From contig CAJFCJ010000028.1 of the NCBI GenBank assembly GCA_904063045.1, positions 560,192-624,191 on the forward strand: DNA of 64,000 nt, given 5' to 3'. Below, piece by piece: positions 5,412-63,512 of the stretch. The number at the start of each line of letters is the position of its first letter. Within the stretch, counting starts at the first letter, position 1. Source of the stretch: Dimorphilus gyrociliatus. Lineage: Eukaryota > Animalia > Annelida. The notes beneath the pieces were generated by a model that saw only the letters and a list, made by a program, of their open reading frames with translations, ran no database searches and was not told the DNA's origin. Made by a program: the position numbers and the translations under genes.

Positions 5412-7710
5412 TTATATTAAAGTTATTTCACAGATTTCTTCGGGTTGACCATTTCCAGATCCGAATAGGACTATGTAAACATCATTACACAAATCATTCT
5501 GACATTCGCATATGTACTTGCACTTTGTTGCTTCCGCAGATTCGCTAGTCCATGTGCCAGAGCAGATCATCTTCAGTTTTGGATTTGTAATATCCGTAAG
5601 ATATATAGTTAGATAATTATTTGAATCGTCTAGAAGATTACGTTCACTAGTAGAATCGTTAAAAGTAACAATAACTTGTAGAAACTTCTTGTTGAAGTTT
5701 TTTGGCTTTAATTTTATCAAGAAATAATTAGATTTATCAAATTTAGTACACGTTGTTTCATCTTTATCGTACATGTAGGCAAGTTCTAAGTGTTGATTAC
5801 ATAATGTATTATTGTTTAAAGTATTATTTGTATTCGTATATATGTCAAATGAATACGTTTTAACTTTCTTCTTTTTCTTTGCTTTATCTATTAATTAGAA
5901 AAAAGTTGACAAACAGTTATTTATTGTTATTGTTACGTAATTGAATTGTTTGTCTTTATTTTTATCATATAAAGTAGTTATATATTTTTTATATATTTTA
6001 CCTGAAAACCAGTTAAATATTTGAATTTCATGCGCTAAAGTTGTAGATTCTGAACCAAAGCGAACTTTATTTGGGTCCAATTTATTACCAGTAGAATTTA
6101 TTGACAGTAATGTTTCTTGTTTGTCAAATAAACGACCAAATTGTATACTCTCGCTGTTCCATTTTACAAAGAATTTCTCCCATTCTAAGTATTTTGGAGA
6201 CAAAGAACCAGAATTTGACAAACCGTTATACGTATTTAATACTGCTGTTTCATTGTTAATTTCCAACTGAAAAATAGGTAATAAAACGATTGTTAATAGG
6301 TAATTTAGAATATTTGTCTCTTATCTTTGTCTTTACTTTAATTAATGTTTGATTTTCCTTTAACAAAATCATTATCAAATTACTAAAAGTATTCTCTTGA
6401 GCGTTTAAACTTTTAATACTAAATTCTATTATATTCCAATCTTTACTTTCAGCTTTATATAATCCATTAGAATTTAAGGAATCTATTCCAGAATAGTACG
6501 AAAATAGTGTATCATCTGGAAAATATTAAGATATTTACCAAATGACCTAAAAGATTTAATAGTAAATTTATCATTATAATGAATTTTTTTTTGTTACCAT
6601 TATTAAACATTCCTATAAATACTATTCCAACTTTATCTTGGTCTTCGGACCAAACTTCTTTAACAGTTAATTTAAACCATTCAATATTTTCAAGTTCCTT
6701 ATCAAAGCAATTTATCTTATAATCACTGTTTCTTTCGATTTGTAATAGTTGTTTGTCGCCATTAGACCATAATATTTTGGCTACTTTTATTTGAATATTT
6801 CCCATAGCTGTTATTGGATTTATTATACAGAATTTAAAATTGGACACTGATTGAGAAAGATTAAATAATAGATTTATTTCGCTATCATTACAACTCAATC
6901 TCTGACATTTTGATGATAGCCAATAGTCAAAAGAATAATTCTGTATTTGATTGCAATCTTTCTTATCTTCAGTACTAATATCAGTGCATTTTGTTATTAG
7001 GTTACTTCCGTAAACTTGGCTCATTTTCTCACCATTTTCGCCTATAAGTAATAATAAATATAAGCGACTTATGCATATAAATATTGAAGAGAAAGGAAAT
7101 TTTTAAGTTGAGACTTACTCGTGTAACCCCATACTCCTATCTCCCCAAGGGCAAATTCGAATGGGTCTGGTTCGTAATATCTCTCAGGAGAAAAAACAAG
7201 AGAAGATTGATCTTTTAAATGAACTACATGACATCTATAGTCATAATCTTTTTGAAGATTTAGGAAAAGATTTTTCGGAGTGTCTTCTTCCTTGAAAGTT
7301 ACTCGAATTTTCTCAATAAAGGAAGTTGTATTTGAATTTCTTGTGAATCCTTGACGAAAGCAAATTTGCTGAATGTCATATTTTCTTGCAAATGTTACAG
7401 TAATATTAACAAAAGTACAAGATTCTTCTAAGCCGCATTTTATTACAAATGAACTTGGTTGCTGCCATATTGGGCTTAGTGAATTTTTACATTCGTAAGT
7501 AAAATTAAATTCCTCAAATTCGGCTTTACTCGTATTGCAAATAGCGTTATTTTCCAATGAAGCAAAATTTTTAAAAGCTCCATCTGTTAAAGAAGATTAT
7601 AATTGAAAATATATTATATAATAATGATTTCTTGAAATAAAACAACCTAAATTGAGTTGATAAGTTTTCAATAACAGCGAATATATGAATAATATTATAA
7701 AGAGAAACAT
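5412..7710 (-). CDS. Secreted multi-domain protein, paralog A (~596 aa): signal peptide, two Cys-containing discoidin/galactose-binding-like beta-sandwich domains, a farnesoic-acid-O-methyltransferase-like domain and a Cys-rich C-terminal domain
   Basis: Six GT-AG exons: 7710-7647, 7583-7119, 7041-6598, 6515-6337, 6266-6002, 5785-5412 (1791 nt, in frame). The N-terminus MFLFIILFIYSLLLKTYQLNL is signal-peptide-like. It aligns domain by domain with paralog B (FTYECKNSLSPIW/FTYSCTHALKPIW; YDIQQICFRQG/YDLQLICFRQG). Domain names come from motif resemblance, not a database search. Confidence 0.8.
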
Positions 7711-10891: not shown

Positions 10892-11972
10892 AGGTTTTTA
10901 AAGGAAAATCTTTATAAAAATAACACCAGACAGAATATCTTGTATGATAAATGCTGTAACAAAATGATAAGATTTTATATAAATATTCACATGTTATATA
11001 CAATTGAAACATTTTAAATATATCTATTTTAATGAATAAACTATATTTAGAATTGTCTATTTTTGTTATAATATTTATATAACAGTATAATAAATTTGTA
11101 TTGGGTTCTTAAACGATTTATTAATATTTTTGTTCGAGTTGATCAATTTTCATTTTGATGTGATATAGTTATAATCTTATTACTTTTGTTCAATTTTTAG
11201 AATTAGGTCAAAAACGTTCAATTACGTGCTTTTTTATTAAAAAATTTTCTTCTAATATACCATCGGCTAGATGTCGTTAGTAATGATTTTTGTATTTTTT
11301 AAAAAAATTTGGTGTGTACTTTATTCCTTTGTTAAAGCTGTTAGTCATACACCTATCCACTCATAGTGTTCCAGCCCTGAGTGAACTGAAATGTTTGTAG
11401 TCAAGCAAAAGTCTCTTATTCAATATTGCTTTAAAAAATGTTCAATTAAAGCGCCATCTGTCATTTATAACTCATGCCCTACTTTTCAAATACAATGGCT
11501 ATGACACAGGGTGTACAAAGGACTTGAAAAGCATCAACAACTAGGCCCATGAAACCCGTAGTATTAAAAAATAAATAACGGCCATAAAAGAGTATTAAAT
11601 CATGTTTTTCAAGTCTGCTTCTGTGTTTACGTTGAGTATTTTAGAAAGTATACCGAAAATACGAGGTTTTAAGGAGAAAGAAGGATAAATTATTCTCTTA
11701 GCATAAAGAAAAATCTATCTATTTATCTCTACATCGCAAAGTGAAGAAAGAGAAAAGGGAAAAAAGGATTTAAAAGAAAAATAAGATCTACTTATTCGTC
11801 CATTTTTTCCTCATTTGATTATAATTCCAATAGAGACAAAAATAGACATTAGTGTGTATATATATGTTTATTTGCGGTCAAGATAGAAAGGAGAGACAGA
11901 CGTCGAAAGTTGAACTGTATTTTTATCTCTTTAGTTTAAGATTTTTGCTTGTATAAAAGAAATAGAGAGATT

Positions 11973-12999
11973 ATGACTAATGTTACTAATACTTTAAATT
12001 TACTTAATGAAACAACAACAAATTTGTTATTGACTGCCGTTTATAGTACTTTTCAAGTTGAGAATACAACTCGAATTGTTGAGAAGAGCTCGATAAAAGA
12101 TCCTAGCAATAATGATGATAATGGTGATATAAATGCTGGAATAATTGCGGCTTGTTGCGCAGGAGGACTTGTAGTTTTATTTGCTTTCGTTTGCCTTGTA
12201 CTTCGATATAAATGCAGGTTAGTATCACTTATTATAAAATATAGCAAATACAGTATATGATTGATCAGTATATAAATAGAGATGTGCACTGTATATTTCA
12301 TTTTTCAAGATTTATCGATTAGATATCCATTGCTTTTTGAATTCAATACTGTTTTAAAGGATGCCAGCAATACCGCTAGGGGTAAAATGGTTTACATGTA
12401 TTGAACAAGAGGATAAATAGATGTAGCTAAGGTGAAAATATATAAATTTTATAGTACATATATATGTACATAAATCTAATATATATGTATATGTGTCAAT
12501 GGGAGTAAACAGCTTATGAAATAAGGTCGTTTAGGACAAAATACAATCTATTTCAAGGTTATAACTATCGCTTTCAAACAGAAGTGTATCGACGCCACTA
12601 AAATCCAATAAGAGACGCTTCCAAGAGAATTTTGATAATAAGAATTTCGTATTTGAAGATGAGACTTTAAAAATTGAACGTCCTCTACCTCCAGAACCAA
12701 AAAACCATATTGAAGTATTAGAAAGAGCAGAAGAAGCTATTGAGAGTTTAGATTTATCAGACGGTATCACAGAAAAGAAAATATCAAATAACGATCGTAA
12801 AATTAACGGTGATATCAATCTATCTGAAAAAAGTAACCTGTCAAATGGTGAAACCGTGGTTGAAGTTCACAGAGAACTAACGGAAAGTGAAAAGAATCTA
12901 AGGGACTTAACAATTACACCAGACGAACTGGATTATCAGTCCAGCATAAATGAAATAGACAAAGTGTTAAATAATTTGGTCGATGAAGAAAGCATTTAG
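11973..12999 (+). CDS. Uncharacterised single-pass membrane protein (~220 aa)
   Basis: join(11973-12217, 12582-12999) = 663 nt with a phase-2 GT-AG intron. The Thr/Asn-rich N-terminus carries sequons NVT, NET and NTT. TM segment AGIIAACCAGGLVVLFAFVCLVL is followed by basic RYKCR and an acidic tail ending LVDEESI. An extra middle exon near 12360 is possible. Confidence 0.65.
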
Positions 13000-54147: not shown

Positions 54148-57100
54148 CTATGATATCAATAATTTTTGCTTCGTTTTCAAGTAGGAATCTGCGGAATTGT
54201 TGATTGATAGAAGAATCCCAAAATTTAGCTGTAGTTGAACGAAATAATTAAAAACAACATAAACTACTTGTATATATTTATGGATTGTTTAGTGTGTTTT
54301 ACCTTATTTTTCTTTAATCTATTAAGAAACAGAAGTGGATTTTTATCTTTTTTCGCCGTATGCTGATCTATGCAAATCATTTGACATCGTTTACAATCTC
54401 CTGTTTTCTAAGTTGAGTCAAAAAACACTCCATTAGTTTGAATTAGATTCTAAGTAAGATTGAAATAAAAAACTACAGATGGCATGACGGTCTAATGAAT
54501 GACTGCCTGTGGTTTGGTTTTTTGCTCTACCAATCCGATTTGAGACGGTTTCAATTTCAATTTCCACACCATCTAGAGATTTCTAATCTATTCTTGAAAC
54601 TTACTGTTAAATTCAGCCCGTCTATCGTAATTTCCTTCCAGCACTCTTCGTGAAAGGGTGGAGAACCGCTCACAATTAGGTTTGCTCTGAATCGATCCTC
54701 TTCCCTTACATCTGTCGAAGATAATTCAATTAGGGAAAACCCTAGAATTGGTGCAAATTTAGTTACCAAATTTTGGCAGGGAAAGAAGCGATTGAACACT
54801 ACTTCTAGAGATCAAAAGTAATTTCTCTTGATTACTGAATAAATCGCCTTTTCCTTCATTTACTTTATGAAAATACAGATAATTTTCTTTTAAATGACTT
54901 ACAATGTTGAATATTTATGTAGAAAGGCTTAATTTTTATCTTATTTACATGGAATTCTTCGAATTAAGCGGCAACCTGACAGTCCCAATATCTGATTAAA
55001 CCACTCGCTAGCTTCTTCGTCTTCTTCAATACCCTCAACTCTTTGTGATGAATAGAAAAAAGGACAATTACTATCATTTCCTGTTAATTCTATATACAAT
55101 TTTTTCCCAATTAATCAACTATAAGTATACTAAATTATTGAATAAATCTTCTTCGACTCGACATTCATAACTATTTATCCAAATGAATTGATAAAATGAA
55201 TTTACAAAAATAGAATTCCCCTTATTCTTTCCTGTAGATGGCTCTTGTACTTACATTTTTCCACAAACAGTCGCCTTCCTAGTAATTCGTCCTTTAACGG
55301 ACCTTTTTAAAGTAACAATTTGTTTAAATACTTTTATGACAGTTACTCATTTTTGCTATCTCTTTCTCTCTCTCTCTCTGTCTCTCTGTATCTGTATGTC
55401 TCTCATTGGTTCATCCCCCTTCCTTTCTCCCTAACTCTTTGGAATAGTTTTTTGACTATCTTTTCATTCTTTACAAGTTTAAGGACAAAAAATTTATCTA
55501 ATAAAAACAAGAGTAAAAAAGTAGGAAGAATAGATTTTTTTGTGCCGAATTTTCATAAGATAAACTGAGAAAGAGAGAGAGAGAGAGAGAGGGAGAGAGA
55601 AGAGATTGAGAACTGAGAATAAAAATTTTCGTTTCTTTTCATTAGTGATTCTTATCTTAATTTTGATAATAGTTAAAAATAAAGATACTTTAGTTTGTAT
55701 TAATTAATAGTAGTTTAAATTCACAAAAAGTTACTTTAAAGAGATAATTAAGTTGTCTACTCCTGAAGAAAAATGAGACGTGGCTTAATTAGTTTAATAT
55801 ACTTAAATCTTAATTTAAAATTTCGGAGTCACGCACCTGGATAGGACAGAGTTATTTTTTTTAAAGTTAAATCTATTTCTGGCTTAACTAAGCATAAATT
55901 TGCGTGTTTCTTTTGAGTTATAGTATCTCCTCTAGCTGTTATTATCATCCATTGTCTATCGTATAGTAATTCTTGATTGAGAATTGGCCAGCTTCCATCC
56001 TAGGGTAAGGGTAGACAAAAAAGAAAGATTTATAAAAAATGGAAAATTTAAAGAGATCCCAAAATAGGAGAGGGGAAGTAAATTTACTATTTCAAAGGCG
56101 GCGCAGGATTTAATCGGATAGACGCAAATGCGTTCGATAACCACCGAACAAGATTCCCTTTCCTGGTGTTTAGTTGGGGTTGTCTCCTTGAGGGAAGAAA
56201 AAAAAACAAAAAAGATATCATCGTCTCATTCACATATTCGTTTCATCTTTAAAATTAATTAAAATAGGCCTAATCAAAGTTAACCATTGAAAAGGAGAGT
56301 ATACTTTGAAATAGAGCTATGTACGCATATCTGACCTTAGTTTATAATTAATACGTATAGTTTGCACATTGTATACAAATTTATAAATTACTTTTAAAGT
56401 ATAACCATATATACAGTAGAATAAATTAATTTATGAATACTCATTAATGCTATGACCTTCATGAATAAACTATTTATCGGCCTTACATATGATTTATTAT
56501 AAATAGTAATTTGACAACTTTCCTAACTAATTGGCGGGAAAGCTGATTTATTTTTTAACATGTAGTCCTATACACAAAAAAACCAGATTTTCACTTTTAT
56601 TTATTTACATACTTCAATGTTTCTATTGAATTTTTAAAAGGAAGCTGTCATATCCATGATCTATGAGGTTATATATTCTATTGAAGATGATGGGAATGAG
56701 TGGGAAAACTAGAGAGGCTTAGGAGATACGTTTTAAACTTACTATAATAATTTATTTGGCGGGGAAGAAAGCCATTAATAAGTAAATAAAATTTATCTAG
56801 TAATGAGTTGACAATTAAATAAGCCTTTCAAAGTATTAATCAAGCTTTATCAAGGCTTTCGTATAGTAATAGATTCTTTTTCACCGGAAATGGGAGCAGG
56901 GTGGTGAGCAGGCCCCACTACGTAATAGAACTAATATGGAAGAGTACTATGACTAGTTTTGTGCCTGTAAATTATAAAAATAGAGAAAGTCCATACACTC
57001 ATACGCGTGAGAATGGAAGAATTAAGATGGCTAAATGTAGGACTGTTTTAAAAGAAAGGATAAAAGAAACGTAGGAATGGTTTGAGGGCGCTAGTAGAAA

Positions 57101-60100
57101 ATGGTAAGAACCTTGTTCTCGTCAACAAAGTTAGTTAGAAACTTCAAGAATCTCTCGACATCCTCCCATAAAGTCATATAGCCAAAAGAAATTCTTATAG
57201 CACCCGTTGGTTTATCATTAATGAGATCATTATCGTCCCCACACACGTGACCCAAATCAAACTGCTTAAGAACCTCATCGTCAGAAAGTTTCAGAAAGTA
57301 ATGACAGGCTCCCAAATTACAGAAGCATCCAGTCCGAAATTCTATATTGAATACTTTTGCCAGCTTGGTGACACGGCTATATCCGATAACGTTTCCGGAG
57401 GCGTCGAATAAATTAAAGGCAATAACTGGTCCTTGCGTGTCCTTATTAATAGTGTCGTGTAACGAATATATTTCTATCAATTTCTTTCCGTTTGTGTGTT
57501 GAATAGATTTCAGACGACCAGCACATTTCTTTACAAGCTTTAACAATAAAAATAATAAAATATAAAATATTTTCTGGTAGTTTTTTCTTTTAAAAAAAAA
57601 AGCAATCAATAAAATAAAGATAACATTTCGAAATACGAAGCATACATTCCTATATCATTATTTCGTAATAAAATTAATTTATTCTAATTAATGTCATTAT
57701 CCTTTAAATAATTAGCTAAAAGTTAAACCAAAAACAAAGATAGAAAGAAGAGGAAAGGAAGGAGAGAGAAAGATAGAAAGAGTATGAATAATGACAAAAT
57801 AACAATATATTAGCTTCTATCTTTTTTTTTATAATTTAAATAATAATGAAAATACGTATAGGCTTTCTTTCATTATTTACCATAAACGGTGATGCTGTAA
57901 AGAGGAAAAAAAATACTAAGAACAAAAGGAAGCATAGATGATTCTATAAAATCTCACACTCTGAAGCATTTCCTAAGCCTATAACTCCTATAACTTCTAA
58001 GTTCCAATAGACTTTCCTCTTGTAATTGATACATGAAAGAGAGAAGAGAAAACCGTAAAGCCGGTTACGAGCAACCCATGGAAAGGAGAAATCAAGATGA
58101 AAATTTGGATATAGTTGCTGTAATTTGTCCTATTTTTCAGGATTTTTTGTAACTTTTTAAGGCGTTATTTGATTATTCTAACAGGGCTTTTCTGTACTCA
58201 TTTAAGCTTATAATTATTTAAGGATTAGGAAAATATATGGGAAAAATACGTGGGATGCTTTGAGGAAAGGTATAGGGAAAAAAAACATGTTTACCTTAGT
58301 CTTCTAATGTACGTTTAGCTCCAGGGTGTTTCCTTAATATATTTAATGGGCAGTGATTAATAAGTAAACTTTTATCGAAATTCTCTTAGAGAAAAAGATC
58401 TAAGGAAAAGGTCTTTTAAAAGTATCATGGTTAATTAAGCAAAATACTTGGAATCAGGTTATTTTGATTCGTTAAGAGAAACTGATAATTCGTGACAGGA
58501 TGAAAATGACTTTAAATTATAAAATTACTAGTCTAAATTCAGATTTCTTTTCTCCTTTGAATTCTATTCACATAATTGTCGAGTTGGAAGAATCTATCTA
58601 CAATTCCTCTGCCTATTATGAAGCAATACGATAAATGCAAGGTCTTCTATTGTGTTCTGGATTACCCTTTCAGACCTAATTGCTGCTGATTGGCAGTTCG
58701 TCCCTTTGGTTACTAAGGACTAATCTTAGTTTCCTAAAAAAATAGTAAAAGGAAACGCTGATATAGCGCCGTTCTGGGCCTTCATAAAACACAAATAATA
58801 ATCCTCGCAATACATTGGGGGGAATAAGGCCAACAATAATTGAGATTTCCAACTAAATTATCTCTTCTCTGCCGAGAAAAGAAAAACAGATAAAGCTATT
58901 CGATGCATGTTAAGAAAAGAAAAAAGAAAAAAAAATGAGGGTAGGAAAATATCTTTGCTTAAACATTAGCGTTAAAAAAATATAATGCTACACCTGTCAT
59001 TTTCATTCGCTTGTTTTTACTGGGATTTACCTAATTGTCTAATAACGAGATTACGATATTATACGGAACTTATTATTGTATATTACTATTACGAATAAAA
59101 TAATAATTTAATGTGTTAATTAATTAATTAATTAAGTAGCTTGTAAGCGATTATGTTAAAAATAATGGCAATAAATAATACCTTGAAAGTATAATTCTGA
59201 ACGTTTAGTATACCTCCTGCAAAACACGAGAAATGAAGGAATATTTATATACTGTATATATACTGTATAATTTGCATTAATGTATATTTAAAATAAAATA
59301 TTAAGAAAGTAAACAAATAAAAGAAAATAATAAGTTTATATATATATAAAAAAGAAGAGAACAAGGCGAAGAAATCTTTCTTGTATTTGTATAAAGAGAA
59401 AATGTAATAAATGTAATTAGAATGAAAGTAAATAAAAAATACAGTATCGAAACAAAAGAAAGGTAAGAAAAGACACACAAATAATAGAAATCTCTCTTTT
59501 TATCAAAGAAAATTTGATTGAAAATAGAAACTGAAACAAAGTGAAGGGAAAGAAAGAATTTCAACATATGCAGTTGAAATTGCATATACAATAGCATATG
59601 TCTCTATATATTTTTATATCAGCATGAGAAAGGAGGGATAAAAGGAGAATATGAGAAAGAAAGAAAGAAAGAGAAGACAGACAAACTGAAGTAAATTAAG
59701 AAAAATATATAGCAAATATGCAATATTTATTTTATATAATACGACAACCTGTCAAAGTTTCGAAAGCTACCATTGCGTGTTGCAGTGCTAATATTTCCGT
59801 GAAAGGCAAACTGCCGTCTTCGAAGCTGCAAAAAAGATATATATGCACACCACAATAAGAAATAAATCATATATAGTGTAAACTATAGACTATATGTTTT
59901 ACTTTAGTGAAAGAAGCAAACTTTGAAAATCCTAGTGCTACATCTTTTGGACCTATAAACTTTTCTAATCTCTTATAAATAATAAAGAAAAAGTGCTAAA
60001 ATATAGAAAGATTTATATATATATATATATATAGAGGGAGAGAGTGAGAGTGAAAGAGAGAAAAAAGCAGAAAGATGCCAAGATTTTTTTTGTTTGATAA

Positions 60101-63100
60101 ACATGTGTTATATTTAAATAGAGACTTTTTTTTCAGTTTTCTTATTACATATATACAGTATATATATATTAATATATATATATATATACATATATATTCA
60201 ATATATGTATACATTATACTTATATATATAATATAAAAGATTTTCTACAATCCCCAAAGTGAGGAAATTCGTTTTAAAACGATCCTTAGTTAAGAAAAAA
60301 AAAATCTTTTCAACCTTCTTTGTACAGTTATTTCTATTAGCAGAAACCTTCTGCAAAGTAAACTTATACCGTTCGTGTAAATTCTTTTTGGCTACGTGAT
60401 ATCTCGTATCAGTTAGAGCCATTAGAATAGTACCACCTCCAAAGTAACGTTTCTTCAGCAAATAATCCGAGGAGTTCTGTTTAAAGGACGATAATAATGC
60501 ATTTTAGATATAGTTGAATAAGAAAAAGTGAGGATAAAATCTATCCTAAGGGAATATCTCAGGGAAAAAAAAAACAAGAATTTAAGTAGGAGAGAGGATC
60601 GACAATGTTCTATTCGGGTTCCAACAGATTATCTTCTTTAAAAGATTAAAATTTCTACGGGGAATAAAAAGACAAACGAATAGTCAATATATTATGTGAC
60701 AAAAGTGACTGGTTTATCATTTATAGTTCAATTTATATTACTAAATATAGATTATTGATACGTTGTACTCACAAATTATTTGTTTTTTATTTATATCAGC
60801 TTATTTGTCGCCAGGGAAGATTAAGCTACTTTACTATAAACTGTTAAGTGTCTTATTCTCTGTTCTTTTAAACTTTTTTCTTTACATACATATTCCCGTC
60901 TTCCCTATCCTTTTTGCTAAATTTTTCATTTTTTCCCTCTATCCTTCTATCCTCTCCCATTCTCTTCCTGTTTTTTTTTCTTTTTACTACTTGTTATTTA
61001 TAGACAATACTTTAGGGACTACGCGATAAATGCGAAGAGTGTAGAGAATTTGACCTAGAAAAATGGATCGAAACTAACCTTTACAATTAATGCTCCTAAA
61101 CCAGTAGGAAAGCCGAAAATTTTATAAAAACTAACGACACAAAAGTCAGGTTTGAAAGCACTTAAATCCAAGAGTGAAGTCGAGCAGAAACTAGCTGCGT
61201 CCAAAAGGACAGAAAATCCATTATCTCGACATCTCGAAATCCATTGCAGAGGGTACTTATTCCCTGAGAAATTACTTTGAGCAGTATACATGAATAAATT
61301 ATGACAACCGGCTCGTCCTGTTAAATCAAATGTTCTAGTGCATTCAATTCGCACATTGTCCTTCATTAATTCCCTGATTCCCAAGGCAGATGTATGACAA
61401 TCCTATAGAAATGCAGATTTTCAACCTACTACGTGTGTTCAAAACACCTTTTGTTTCATATTAAAATTTTAATAATGTAAAGATTAAAGTTTCTAAAAAA
61501 CAACAATAGAAAACTATTATAGCCTATATAATATATATATATATATATATAATATATACAGCGTAAACTGTAATACACTATATATATGAAATTGAAGATT
61601 ATCTGCATTCCTCATGATAGGCGAAGATGGATGAATCCTGGAAGTCAAAAGTTTCTCCTACCAATTTAAGAGAAGCTGTTGCGCCGGAGGAAAAAATCAA
61701 GGTGTACTCGTCGGAATTAGTCTTGAAAAAGTTCAGCACCTTTTCTCTGACATTTTCTATAAGATCGTACGTAAACACGCCACTTTCGTGTTTACTGTGC
61801 GGATTAGAATAGAGATTTTGCTGTAGATTATCCGCAAAAGTTTGAATTTGAATCTTTGAGTAGATTGTAGTACCAGCATGATCAAGATATGTTTTATCTA
61901 ATGAGAAAAGAAAGAAACATAAAGCGTTAATAGAAGAGAAACATCTTTAATAAATATGCTTACTACGAGTTTTCTATAGAAACTGTATACAAATATAATA
62001 TAAGATGGAGATTTAAGACAAAAAATATATTAAGCTAAAGAAAAACGGTTAGATTGATTCCATTTTTCCGTTTGAAAGAGTAAGCCTCTCTCTGCCCCTC
62101 TCCCCTACCTCCTTCCCTATATAAGATTTTTGGCCTATATGACACAATGCAGACATAAAAGCAAATTAGATTGTCTGAAATTTTGTATGGAATTATTTAA
62201 ATGTTGTCTGTATTTTATACATTTCTGTTTTTTTTAAGGCAATAAGTATTATAACAGCTAGACGTTTCACTCTTTTTTAATATTTTCCAATTATCCAACA
62301 TCTTAGGTTCAAATATAATGATAAAAACATATATAATATCAAATTTTACATAAATTTTCCCTCACGGAATCATTGGCAAAGTGTACATTGAAAAACAAAC
62401 AAGATATTTAATCAATAGCAACCGCAGAATATCTTGAAGAAAATTTAAAGTATTGTTTGTTTTGCGTTTTTTTTCGCCTAAAAAATATTCTCCTAAGATT
62501 GTTTGCCAATCTGTAATTATATAAAACAGTATAATTAAGCAATTAAGTAGACCGAGGGTGTGCGGAGGGACGGGAGAGAGAAGAAAGAGAGTATATATAT
62601 ATACATATATATATATGTGTGTGTGTGGGTGGTGTGTGAAAGGGAGGGAAGGAGGATAAAAAATAAAAAGAAAATTAATAATCAATTTCAATTATCTATT
62701 CAATCAAAAATTGAATAACAATAGATTTTAGCGAGAATGTTGTATTGTTTTATTTCTCTTCTTGAACGTATTTATAATTTGAATAGATATTTTTAAACGT
62801 TTGCTTTTTAAATTAGCACTTAATAAGTTTACTGATGCGAAATTGAAGCATTAGTAGTGAAATACGAGGCCATAAAGGAGCTATTGTTTTTAATTAATTT
62901 AGTAGAATCCGTTGTTAACTATTTTAACAACAGGTAACATTATGGAAAGTTAATAGTGTGTTATATAAGAAAATTGATATTTTTATATGTTAATTAGACT
63001 TTATTTGTTAGGTTTAACAATAAAAAAAGGACACCCATTGAGACGTTTAATAAAAGAAAATAACCTACCAATAAAGGGAAAGATCAATGGTTCTATTGAT

Positions 63101-63512
63101 AGTAAAGATGCTAAAGTAATGAGATAAATAGCTCTTTAATATTTTGTCAAAGTAACAGCATGGTCTCATTACGTAGGTTTCTTACTTAAAGCAATTAAGC
63201 GTAATCATCAAAACACGAATAGATAAAAGGGCTGCAATAAAGTCTTTAAAGGTTTTTTTCCCATCAGTTACAGAAAACAAGTGGTTGATTACTGGCTACT
63301 GTACTATTTTTGTAATTCTTTTACAAAACAACAGAACACTGACCTATTAAATTGCAAATAAAACAATTAAACGATATAATCAATCATATAATGGACAGTG
63401 TAAGCATTTAATTGGCAATGAAAAGTACACCTTCTAATTGAGGAAATTCTCTTTTTCTTATATTTTTAATAGATTCCTCGTAATTATCAACTGTTTCGCA
63501 TAAATCTTCCAT
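54148..63512 (-). CDS. MOCOS: Molybdenum cofactor sulfurase (NifS-like PLP domain + MOSC_N + MOSC, ~718 aa)
   Basis: 15 exons: 63512-63431, 61897-61611, 61402-61079, 60476-60370, 59825-59749, 59216-59182, 57537-57112, 56186-56088, 55999-55837, 55330-55255, 55040-54949, 54862-54767, 54711-54605, 54407-54303, 54228-54148 (2157 nt, in frame). Motifs IRKREFPQL..KTYLDHAG, NPHS, SFYKIFGFPTGLGAL (PLP Lys), YFGGGT, RFEDGS, FRTGCFCNLGAC (persulfide Cys), IYPIKSC-like VYPIKSCAA, RFRAN and CKRCQMICIDQ. Intron 2 requires a GA donor. Confidence 0.93.
61403..61610 (-). other. Putative non-canonical GA-AG intron 2 of MOCOS (208 nt)
   Basis: CAT GAG|gaatgc...ttctatag|GAT TGT CAT yields an ungapped FAYHEDCHTSALG, matching the family consensus F.YL.D.HTSV.G. 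Confidence 0.7.

What the first reader, a model, noticed from the sequence alone, without database searches (positions are those of the whole stretch)
61395..61620. MOCOS appears to need a GA-AG intron to make an intact enzyme
Seen: exon 2 reads ...LKLVGETFDFQDSSIFAYHE and runs into TAA three codons later. The next exon starts right after an in-frame TAG acceptor with DCHTSALGIRE. The only join that keeps the conserved F.Y..D.HTS motif gap-free uses gaatgc as donor. The nearest upstream phase-0 GT would delete 17 conserved residues, and the nearby GC has the wrong phase. The other 13 introns are GT-AG and all catalytic motifs are intact, which suggests the gene is functional. Known: GA-AG introns are very rare in animals but occur systematically in a few lineages. 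Inference: this is either a real non-canonical donor (helped by the exonic AG) or a T>A allele or assembly error of gtatgc.
Basis: partly seen in the sequence, partly recalled or inferred. Interest (0 to 1): 0.75.

Follow-up and report, generated by a model that had tools for sequence, protein, structure and literature searches.

The report
Helix-clamped GA-AG intron in MOCOS
The molybdenum-cofactor sulfurase gene of this small AT-rich animal genome can only give an intact enzyme if a 208-base intron starting with GA instead of GT is removed. The two ends of that intron pair into a 12-base helix, as in two other GA-AG introns I checked in the same genome, so it is probably real and not a sequencing error.

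Summary
On the minus strand, exon 2 ends ...FAYHE at 61611 and the next bases are gaatgc, with an in-frame TAA three codons on. Exon 3 starts at 61402 (DCHTS) after tatAG. Joining 61611 to 61402 matches 17 of 22 homologues with no gap, and no in-frame GT-AG pair exists for this junction.

AG|GAAUGCAGAU (61612-61601) pairs with AUCUGCAUUUCU (61418-61407): 12 bp with one G.U, then a 6-bp second helix. The duplex is about -18 to -19 kcal/mol, against -1.8 to -7.9 for seven GT introns of the same gene (chance 2e-4 to 7.5e-4). The unusual A(+2) pairs with U(-8), and a T there would weaken the helix.

I found the same architecture in GA-AG introns of HAP2 and a MutS-family (MSH5-like) gene. The MutS intron uses the identical pairing register. 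The scan has noted this kind of intron before at other loci of this genome, which earlier notes call Dimorphilus gyrociliatus.

The intron position is absent from mussel, beetle and skink MOCOS. The intron ends are single-copy, and the U1 genes have normal 5' ends.

Missing: no transcript and no close-relative orthologue could be found for this intron.

Verdict: a real helix-ended GA-AG intron, about 0.7. Assembly error or T>A allele, about 0.1.

The parts
54297..63512 (-). MOCOS gene (molybdenum cofactor sulfurase), from the ATG at 63512-63510 to the last exon. The 3' end is approximate.
   Evidence: Pfam Aminotran_5, MOSC_N and MOSC on single exons. Exon-by-exon tblastn with homologues.
61611..61897 (-). 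Exon 2 (phase 1 start, phase 0 end), ending ...FAYHE.
   Evidence: Aminotran_5 profile positions 1-79.
61403..61610 (-). Intron 2, 208 nt, GA...AG, phase 0. It carries an in-frame TAA and its length is not a multiple of 3.
61601..61612 (-). 5' arm of the terminal helix, AG|GAAUGCAGAU (last two exon bases plus intron +1 to +10).
   Evidence: Inverted repeat I9. The MFE fold closes with it. Duplex energies.
61407..61418 (-). 3' arm of the terminal helix, AUCUGCAUUUCU (intron -16 to -5), followed by AUAG.
61591..61596 (-). 5' strand of the second, inner helix (UUCAAU, intron +15 to +20).
   Evidence: Duplex prediction and centroid fold.
61420..61425 (-). 3' strand of the second helix (GUUGAA, intron -23 to -18). 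It overlaps the only branch-site-like stretch.
61079..61402 (-). Exon 3, starting DCHTS and ending ...GALIVK. It contains the PLP-lysine motif SFYK.
61898..63430 (-). Intron 1, GT-AG, phase 1.
60477..61078 (-). Intron 3, GT-AG (aag|GTTAGT ... AAACAG|).

Best explanation
Window 61403-61610 (minus strand) is a genuine intron of an intact MOCOS gene. It begins with GA instead of GT and is removed exactly between 61611 and 61402.

It belongs to a recurrent type in this genome. In this type, the last exon bases plus the first 10 or so intron bases (AG|GAA...) pair with a pyrimidine-rich stretch that ends 2-4 nt before the 3' AG (...UUUCU-NN-AG|). A second short helix lies just inside the first. Together they clamp the two splice sites side by side.

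The most likely mechanism (inferred, not shown) is ordinary major-spliceosome splicing:
- The weak donor keeps the exonic AG, G+1, A+3 and G+5, but mismatches U1 at +2.
- The end-to-end helix rescues it by holding the 5' splice site next to the branch and 3' region.
- The helix must then be opened for catalysis.

The intron sits at a position not used in mussel, beetle or skink MOCOS, so it was probably gained in this lineage.
For: - **Sequence and frame:**
- **Junction:** zero-gap in 17 of 22 homologues.
- **No canonical alternative:** no in-frame GT-AG pair for this interval, while the other solvable intervals have one.
- **Gene looks functional:** domains and catalytic motifs are intact.
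- **Terminal helix:** a 12-bp helix including A(+2)-U(-8). The MFE of the whole intron closes with it, z = -4.2.
- **Helix is unusual:** duplex -17.9 to -19.0 kcal/mol, against -1.8 to -7.9 for seven GT introns of the same gene. It is matched by 0.02-0.075% of random or shuffled partners. A U at +2 weakens it to -14.1.
- **Same architecture elsewhere:** the HAP2 intron (L025:2175-2282, 108 nt, -18.1) and a MutS-family intron (L051 minus strand 2101-1946, 156 nt, -23.4). The MutS intron has the identical register A(-2)-U(-5), G(-1)-C(-6), G(+1).U(-7), A(+2)-U(-8).
- **Donor context:** AG|GAA matches the published GA-AG consensus (PMC7072748).
- **Sequence context of the base:** it is not in a homopolymer or simple repeat.
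- **Copy number:** only one copy of the locus exists in the assembly.
Against: - No transcript-derived sequence spanning the junction was found, and no public gene model for this gene, in any of four protein searches. Removal of this particular intron is therefore not shown.
- No orthologue from a close relative was found, so neither the GA nor the helix has been tested by covariation here.
- The helix buries the 5' splice site and the pyrimidine tract. In most systems that inhibits splicing, so the proposed helping role is an inference.
- Part of the pairing (AGGAA with UUUCU) could arise simply from a purine-rich donor facing a pyrimidine tract.
- A blind screen of 264 kb for such helix-ended GA introns was dominated by false positives and showed no clear enrichment.
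Confidence: 0.7

Rival explanations
1. The donor is really GT (gtatgc). The A at minus-strand 61609 would be an assembly or polishing error, or a T>A variant carried by the sequenced animals, and the gene is spliced canonically in the wild type.
For: One substitution gives G|GTATGC, an acceptable donor. No read-level or RNA data could be consulted. The other intervals of the gene have GT-AG solutions.
Against: The A is base-paired in a 12-bp helix, and a U would mismatch there, weakening it from -17.9 to -14.1 kcal/mol. The helix is improbable by chance, at 2e-4 to 7.5e-4. The same GA-plus-helix pattern recurs in the same register at an unrelated locus. The base is not in an error-prone sequence context.
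Confidence: 0.1
2. The sequenced allele is a loss-of-function or decaying MOCOS gene. The intron would be retained or mis-spliced, giving a truncated protein. MOCOS loss is viable in insects (my own knowledge: Drosophila maroon-like, silkworm og).
For: The intron carries an in-frame TAA and there is no canonical donor. No public model or transcript for the gene was recovered.
Against: All twelve recognisable exon cores are open and keep the conserved catalytic motifs on both sides of the intron. The helix and the shared register point to a functional class, not to decay.
Confidence: 0.06
3. A different junction is used. Candidates are GC-AG from 61622 (deleting AYHE), GA-AG from 61613 (deleting one residue), or GT-AG from 61661 (deleting 17 residues).
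For: These junctions are in frame and free of stops. Three of 22 homologues are one residue shorter here.
Against: Each removes conserved residues of the F.Y..D.HTS motif. The GC donor context ttc|GCCTAT is very poor. The 61613 donor lacks the exonic AG. Only 61610 reproduces the register seen in the MutS-family intron.
Confidence: 0.04
4. The intron is excised by a route that depends on the helix and not on U1 recognition of the donor. That would make it an animal analogue of euglenid nonconventional or intermediate introns.
For: The donor mismatches U1 at +2, and the helix hides both the donor and the pyrimidine tract. None of 12 inspected U1 genes has a compensating base. The ends of euglenid introns pair in a similar geometry (PMC4770533).
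Against: The borders are constant (GA...AG after an exonic AG) and keep G+1, A+3 and G+5. That is what a weakened spliceosomal donor looks like. There is no experimental hint of a second mechanism in animals.
Confidence: 0.1

Closest known systems
GA-AG introns of Oikopleura dioica and Eurytemora affinis (Frey and Pucker 2020, PMC7072748)
   Same: An animal lineage with repeated use of GA donors. The GA is preceded by exonic AG and followed by A (AG|GAA), as here.
   Different: No pairing of the intron ends is reported there. The frequency in this genome is unknown. The U1 variant proposed there has no counterpart that would pair with A(+2) here.
Euglenid nonconventional and intermediate introns (PMC4770533, PMC3935182)
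   Same: A stable helix brings the two intron ends together, close to both junctions, and U1 complementarity is reduced.
   Different: Euglenid borders are variable and the conserved pairing is +4 to +6 with -8 to -6 (CAG/CTG). Here the borders are fixed GA...AG, the helix starts in the exon, and +k pairs with -(k+6). This is a resemblance in how it may work, not membership.
Amoebophrya non-canonical introns with 8-20 nt terminal inverted repeats ('introner elements', PMC7789003)
   Same: Inverted repeats between the 5' and 3' ends of the same intron, short direct repeats at the junctions (here AGGA at both), and non-GT donors.
   Different: Those are multi-copy, transposon-like families with many border types. 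This intron's ends are single-copy in the genome.
Human FGFR GA-AG intron (cited in PMC7072748)
   Same: A GA donor spliced efficiently by the major spliceosome.
   Different: According to that paper it depends on a canonical site six bases upstream. No GT lies near this donor.
Intron-end pairing that aids splicing of long yeast introns (my own knowledge, not checked here)
   Same: Complementary segments near the 5' splice site and the branch region shorten the effective distance between them.
   Different: In yeast the donor itself stays canonical and unpaired. Here the donor is inside the helix.

Membership tests
Molybdenum cofactor sulfurase (MOCOS/ABA3/maroon-like) | N-terminal class-V aminotransferase (NifS-like) domain followed by MOSC_N and MOSC domains. 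| tested here: met
   Pfam hits on single exons: PF00266, PF03476 and PF03473 (the MOSC hit is weak: 16.9 bits, below the 22.7-bit cut-off). Exon-wise alignment to annotated MOCOS proteins.
Molybdenum cofactor sulfurase (MOCOS/ABA3/maroon-like) | PLP-binding lysine motif and conserved cysteine motif. | tested here: met
   SFYKIFG in exon 3, RTGCFCN in the 57.5-57.1 kb exon, and CKRCQMIC in the last exon.
U2-type GA-AG non-canonical intron | GA...AG borders whose removal restores the conserved reading frame. | tested here: met
U2-type GA-AG non-canonical intron | Exonic AG before the donor and A at +3 (published consensus). | tested here: met
   gAG|GAAtgc. Consensus from PMC7072748.
U2-type GA-AG non-canonical intron | Precise removal seen in RNA. 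| tested here: inconclusive
   Four protein searches found no transcript-derived ORF or gene model spanning the junction.
U2-type GA-AG non-canonical intron | Lariat or branch point, and dependence on U1/U2. | not testable with these tools
   Only a weak branch-like stretch (GUUGAAAA, -23 to -16) is visible.
Helix-ended GA-AG introns of this genome (class noted earlier by the scan) | A helix of 10 bp or more that includes the donor and ends a few bases before the 3' AG. | tested here: met
   12 bp plus 6 bp, -17.9 to -19.0 kcal/mol, chance 2e-4 to 7.5e-4.
Helix-ended GA-AG introns of this genome (class noted earlier by the scan) | Same architecture at independent loci. | tested here: met
   HAP2 (L025:2175-2282) and a MutS-family gene (L051 minus 2101-1946). 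The register is identical to the latter.
Helix-ended GA-AG introns of this genome (class noted earlier by the scan) | GA and pairing kept, with covariation, in a related lineage. | not tested
   No close-relative orthologue of this gene was found. L009 is a distant species with a GT-AG intron 12 codons upstream.
U12-type (minor) intron | Donor /RTATCCTT and branch site TCCTTAAC. | tested here: not met
   The donor is GAATGCAG and there is no TCCTTAAC-like motif near the 3' end.
Introner / MITE-derived intron | Multi-copy element with terminal inverted repeats and target-site duplication. | tested here: not met
   Inverted ends and a 4-nt AGGA direct repeat are present. However, both ends are unique in the 77.9-Mb genome at up to 3 mismatches, and only the AT-rich middle matches elsewhere.
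Euglenid nonconventional intron | Variable borders with conserved +4 to +6 / -8 to -6 pairing. | tested here: not met
   Borders are GA...AG and +k pairs with -(k+6). Definition from PMC4770533.

The most novel reading that the evidence does not exclude
This miniature animal genome holds a class of lineage-specific introns defined by structure. A 10-18 bp helix joining the two ends would take over part of splice-site recognition and so tolerate GA (and, by earlier notes, GG or GC) at the donor. That would be a metazoan counterpart of euglenid intermediate introns, possibly spliced with little or no help from U1. The shared AG|GAA : UUUCU-NN-AG register of the MOCOS and MutS-family introns would be its signature.
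Probability: 0.2. Interest if true: 0.85.

Novelty: new variant of a known kind. Interest (0 to 1): 0.55.

Why it matters
GT at the start of introns is one of the most constant signals in eukaryotic genes. Animals that use GA repeatedly are few, and how they manage it is unknown.

A set of GA introns whose ends are clamped by a helix would give a concrete, testable mechanism: mutate the helix, then restore it. It would also link animal splicing to the structure-dependent introns of euglenids.

On the practical side, such introns break gene models. No model or transcript-derived protein for this MOCOS gene turned up in the databases searched. Annotation of this genome, and perhaps of other compact genomes, should therefore allow GA-AG junctions.

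Tried and rejected
- **Transcript or gene-model evidence.** I ran one HMMER search of representatives with exon 3. I ran three word-index searches: exon 3 alone, a scaffold homologue plus six exon rows, and a short scaffold plus exons 2 and 3. None returned a protein near-identical to this gene. Exons were always given separately by reference.
- **Close-relative orthologue.** The best partial hits (P0208, P0209) lie on Logan contigs L009 and L010 from distant species. L009 has a GT-AG intron at another position.
- **Second copy or haplotig.** None was found.
- **Dedicated U1.** Of 12 U1 genes inspected, 8 start ATACTTACCTG, 3 start GTACTTACCTG and one is a variant AAACTTACTTG. None would pair with A(+2).
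- **MITE or introner origin.** The intron ends are unique in the genome.
- **U12 type.** Rejected on sequence.
- **A-to-I editing of A(+2).** Rejected by reasoning: inosine reads as G, giving GG and not GU.
- **Blind screens for helix-ended introns.** I screened 264 kb (the window plus C1:100001-300000).
  - They recover the MOCOS intron but are dominated by false positives.
  - Four further AG|GA candidates did not stand up to Pfam or reading checks.
- **Small exons.** The exon or exons between 59750 and 57545 could not be located by homology.
- **Organism name.** I could not verify it independently. It comes from earlier notes and fits the genome size: 77.9 Mb here against 73.8 Mb published (PMC7854359).

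Full report
**What is in the sequence**

The window is AT-rich (about 29% G+C). It lies in a 77.9-Mb assembly of 349 contigs.

On the minus strand between about 63.5 and 54.3 kb lies a gene. Single exons hit Pfam Aminotran_5, MOSC_N and MOSC, the last only weakly (16.9 bits, below its 22.7-bit cut-off). They also align exon by exon to annotated molybdenum cofactor sulfurases.

- Exon 1 starts at the ATG 63512-63510 and ends at 63431, before a GT.
- Exon 2 runs 61897-61611.
- At its end the sequence reads ...ttc gcc tat cat gag | gaa tgc aga taa.
- Exon 3 begins at 61402 with gat tgt cat aca tct, directly after ttctatag.

**Is the GA junction needed?**

I aligned exon 2 and exon 3 separately to homologues from the representatives search. 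I then projected where each exon ends and starts on the homologue.

- In 17 of 22 homologues that cover both sides, the two exons abut with no gap: F.Y..(D/E).HTS, for example FAYLDECHTS.
- An enumeration of all in-frame, stop-free donor/acceptor pairs found no GT-AG pair for this interval.
- Nine other inter-exon intervals have in-frame GT-AG solutions.
- The interval 59750-57545 needs a small exon that homology could not place.
- The exon cores are all open and keep the PLP-lysine and cysteine motifs.

So the gene looks functional, and it needs this intron removed at GA...AG.

Every search used single exons by reference.

**The new feature: the ends pair**

The inverted-repeat scan finds AGGAATGCAGAT (61612-61601) complementary to ATCTGCATTTCT (61418-61407).

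- In RNA this is 12 bp with one G.U.
- It covers the last two exon bases and intron +1 to +10.
- It ends four bases before the 3' splice site.
- A second 6-bp helix (+15 to +20 with -23 to -18) follows.
- The minimum-energy fold of the whole intron closes with this helix, z = -4.2.

The duplex between the two ends is -17.9 to -19.0 kcal/mol. Seven GT-AG introns of the same gene give -1.8 to -7.9. Only 0.02-0.075% of shuffled or random partners do as well.

The unusual A(+2) pairs with U(-8). Replacing it with U lowers the duplex to -14.1. This argues against a simple base error, and the base does not sit in an error-prone context.

**Is it one of a kind?**

Earlier notes of this scan name the organism as Dimorphilus gyrociliatus. 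They list several GA-AG introns with paired ends at other loci. I treated these as leads and checked two.

- **HAP2.** A Pfam search of the genome located the gene. Its profile match is interrupted by a 108-nt stretch, AAG|GAGAGAGATTT...AAATCTCCCTCCAG| (L025:2175-2282). Its ends form an 11-of-12 helix plus a second helix, -18.1 kcal/mol.
- **MutS-family gene.** It has a 156-nt GA-AG stretch between its MutS_III and MutS_V matches (L051 minus strand 2101-1946). The helix is 18 bp with two imperfections, -23.4 kcal/mol.
- **Shared register.** The MutS register is identical to MOCOS: A(-2)-U(-5), G(-1)-C(-6), G(+1).U(-7), A(+2)-U(-8). In other words, AG|GAA pairs with UUUCU-NN-AG|.

In all three genes, GA-AG is the only border pair consistent across the possible cut registers.

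**Origin**

The intron position is absent from Mytilus, Tribolium and a skink, where the motif lies inside one exon. It is also absent from two metagenome eukaryotes and from the Logan contig L009.

Conversely, this gene lacks the intron after ...VRYR that those three animals share. So the intron is probably a lineage-specific gain.

Its ends are unique in the genome, and only the AT-rich middle matches elsewhere. It is therefore not a member of a present-day repeat family. AGGA occurs at both junctions.

**Mechanism**

Twelve of 13 U1 genes were inspected.

- Eight have the canonical 5' end.
- Three start with G.
- One is a variant (AAACTTACTTG).
- None would pair with A(+2).

The donor keeps the exonic AG, G+1, A+3 and G+5, as in the published AG|GAA consensus for GA-AG introns (PMC7072748).

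I therefore favour ordinary spliceosomal removal of a weak donor, helped by a helix that holds the two ends together. This is inference. The helix also buries the donor and the pyrimidine tract, which would normally hinder recognition.

Euglenid intermediate and nonconventional introns (PMC4770533) and Amoebophrya inverted-repeat introns (PMC7789003) are the nearest known analogues. This intron meets the definition of neither.

**What is missing**

- No transcript-derived protein, public gene model or close-relative orthologue was found for this gene.
- The genome paper does not mention non-canonical splice sites.
- No paper in the library links this species with GA-AG introns.

**Verdict**

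- A real helix-ended GA-AG intron: about 0.7.
- A base error or variant of a GT donor: about 0.1.
- A helix-dependent, non-U1 route: about 0.1.
- An inactive allele or another junction share the remainder.

The scan has seen this kind of intron before on other DNA of the same genome. This case adds a shared pairing register and evidence that the intron position is lineage-specific.

Noticed in passing
window 11521-12062 (+): Candidate second GA-AG intron (542 nt): acaaag|GACTTGAAAAG ... CTTTTCAAGTTGAG|aat. It has an 11-bp end helix, again with G(+1).U, and joins open frames of 40 and 65 codons. The downstream frame looks like a single-pass membrane protein. There are no Pfam hits, so it is unverified.
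   Followed up: partly
window 6116-6223 (-): Candidate GT-AG intron (108 nt) whose ends form a perfect 11-bp helix (GTTTGTCAAAT / ATTTGACAAAC), ending 3 nt before the AG. It lies in the region of the secreted mosaic-protein pair. If real, end helices are not limited to GA donors. Pfam on the flanks was uninformative.
   Followed up: partly
window 55357-55610 (+): A (CT)n run and an (AG)n run about 200 nt apart form a very strong inverted microsatellite pair (duplex about -40 kcal/mol). It lies inside a MOCOS intron on the opposite strand.
   Followed up: no
L021 (G000:C3:2401789-2401954); L022-L024: One U1 gene has the 5' end AAACTTACTTG, with two changes in the splice-site-reading arm. Three lower-scoring U1 copies start GTACTTACCTG. 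Eight copies are canonical.
   Followed up: partly
window 61611-61897 (-), compared with L047, L048, L049: This MOCOS lacks the intron after ...VRYR that is shared by mussel, skink and beetle. It has instead an intron those animals lack, so there has been both intron loss and gain within one exon-sized region.
   Followed up: partly
L009:115-225: A Logan contig (SRR29217543) from an unidentified eukaryote carries MOCOS exons 62-79% identical to this gene. It has a GT-AG intron 12 codons upstream of the position used here, and an extra intron inside the equivalent of exon 3.
   Followed up: partly
I did not examine it.
   Followed up: no
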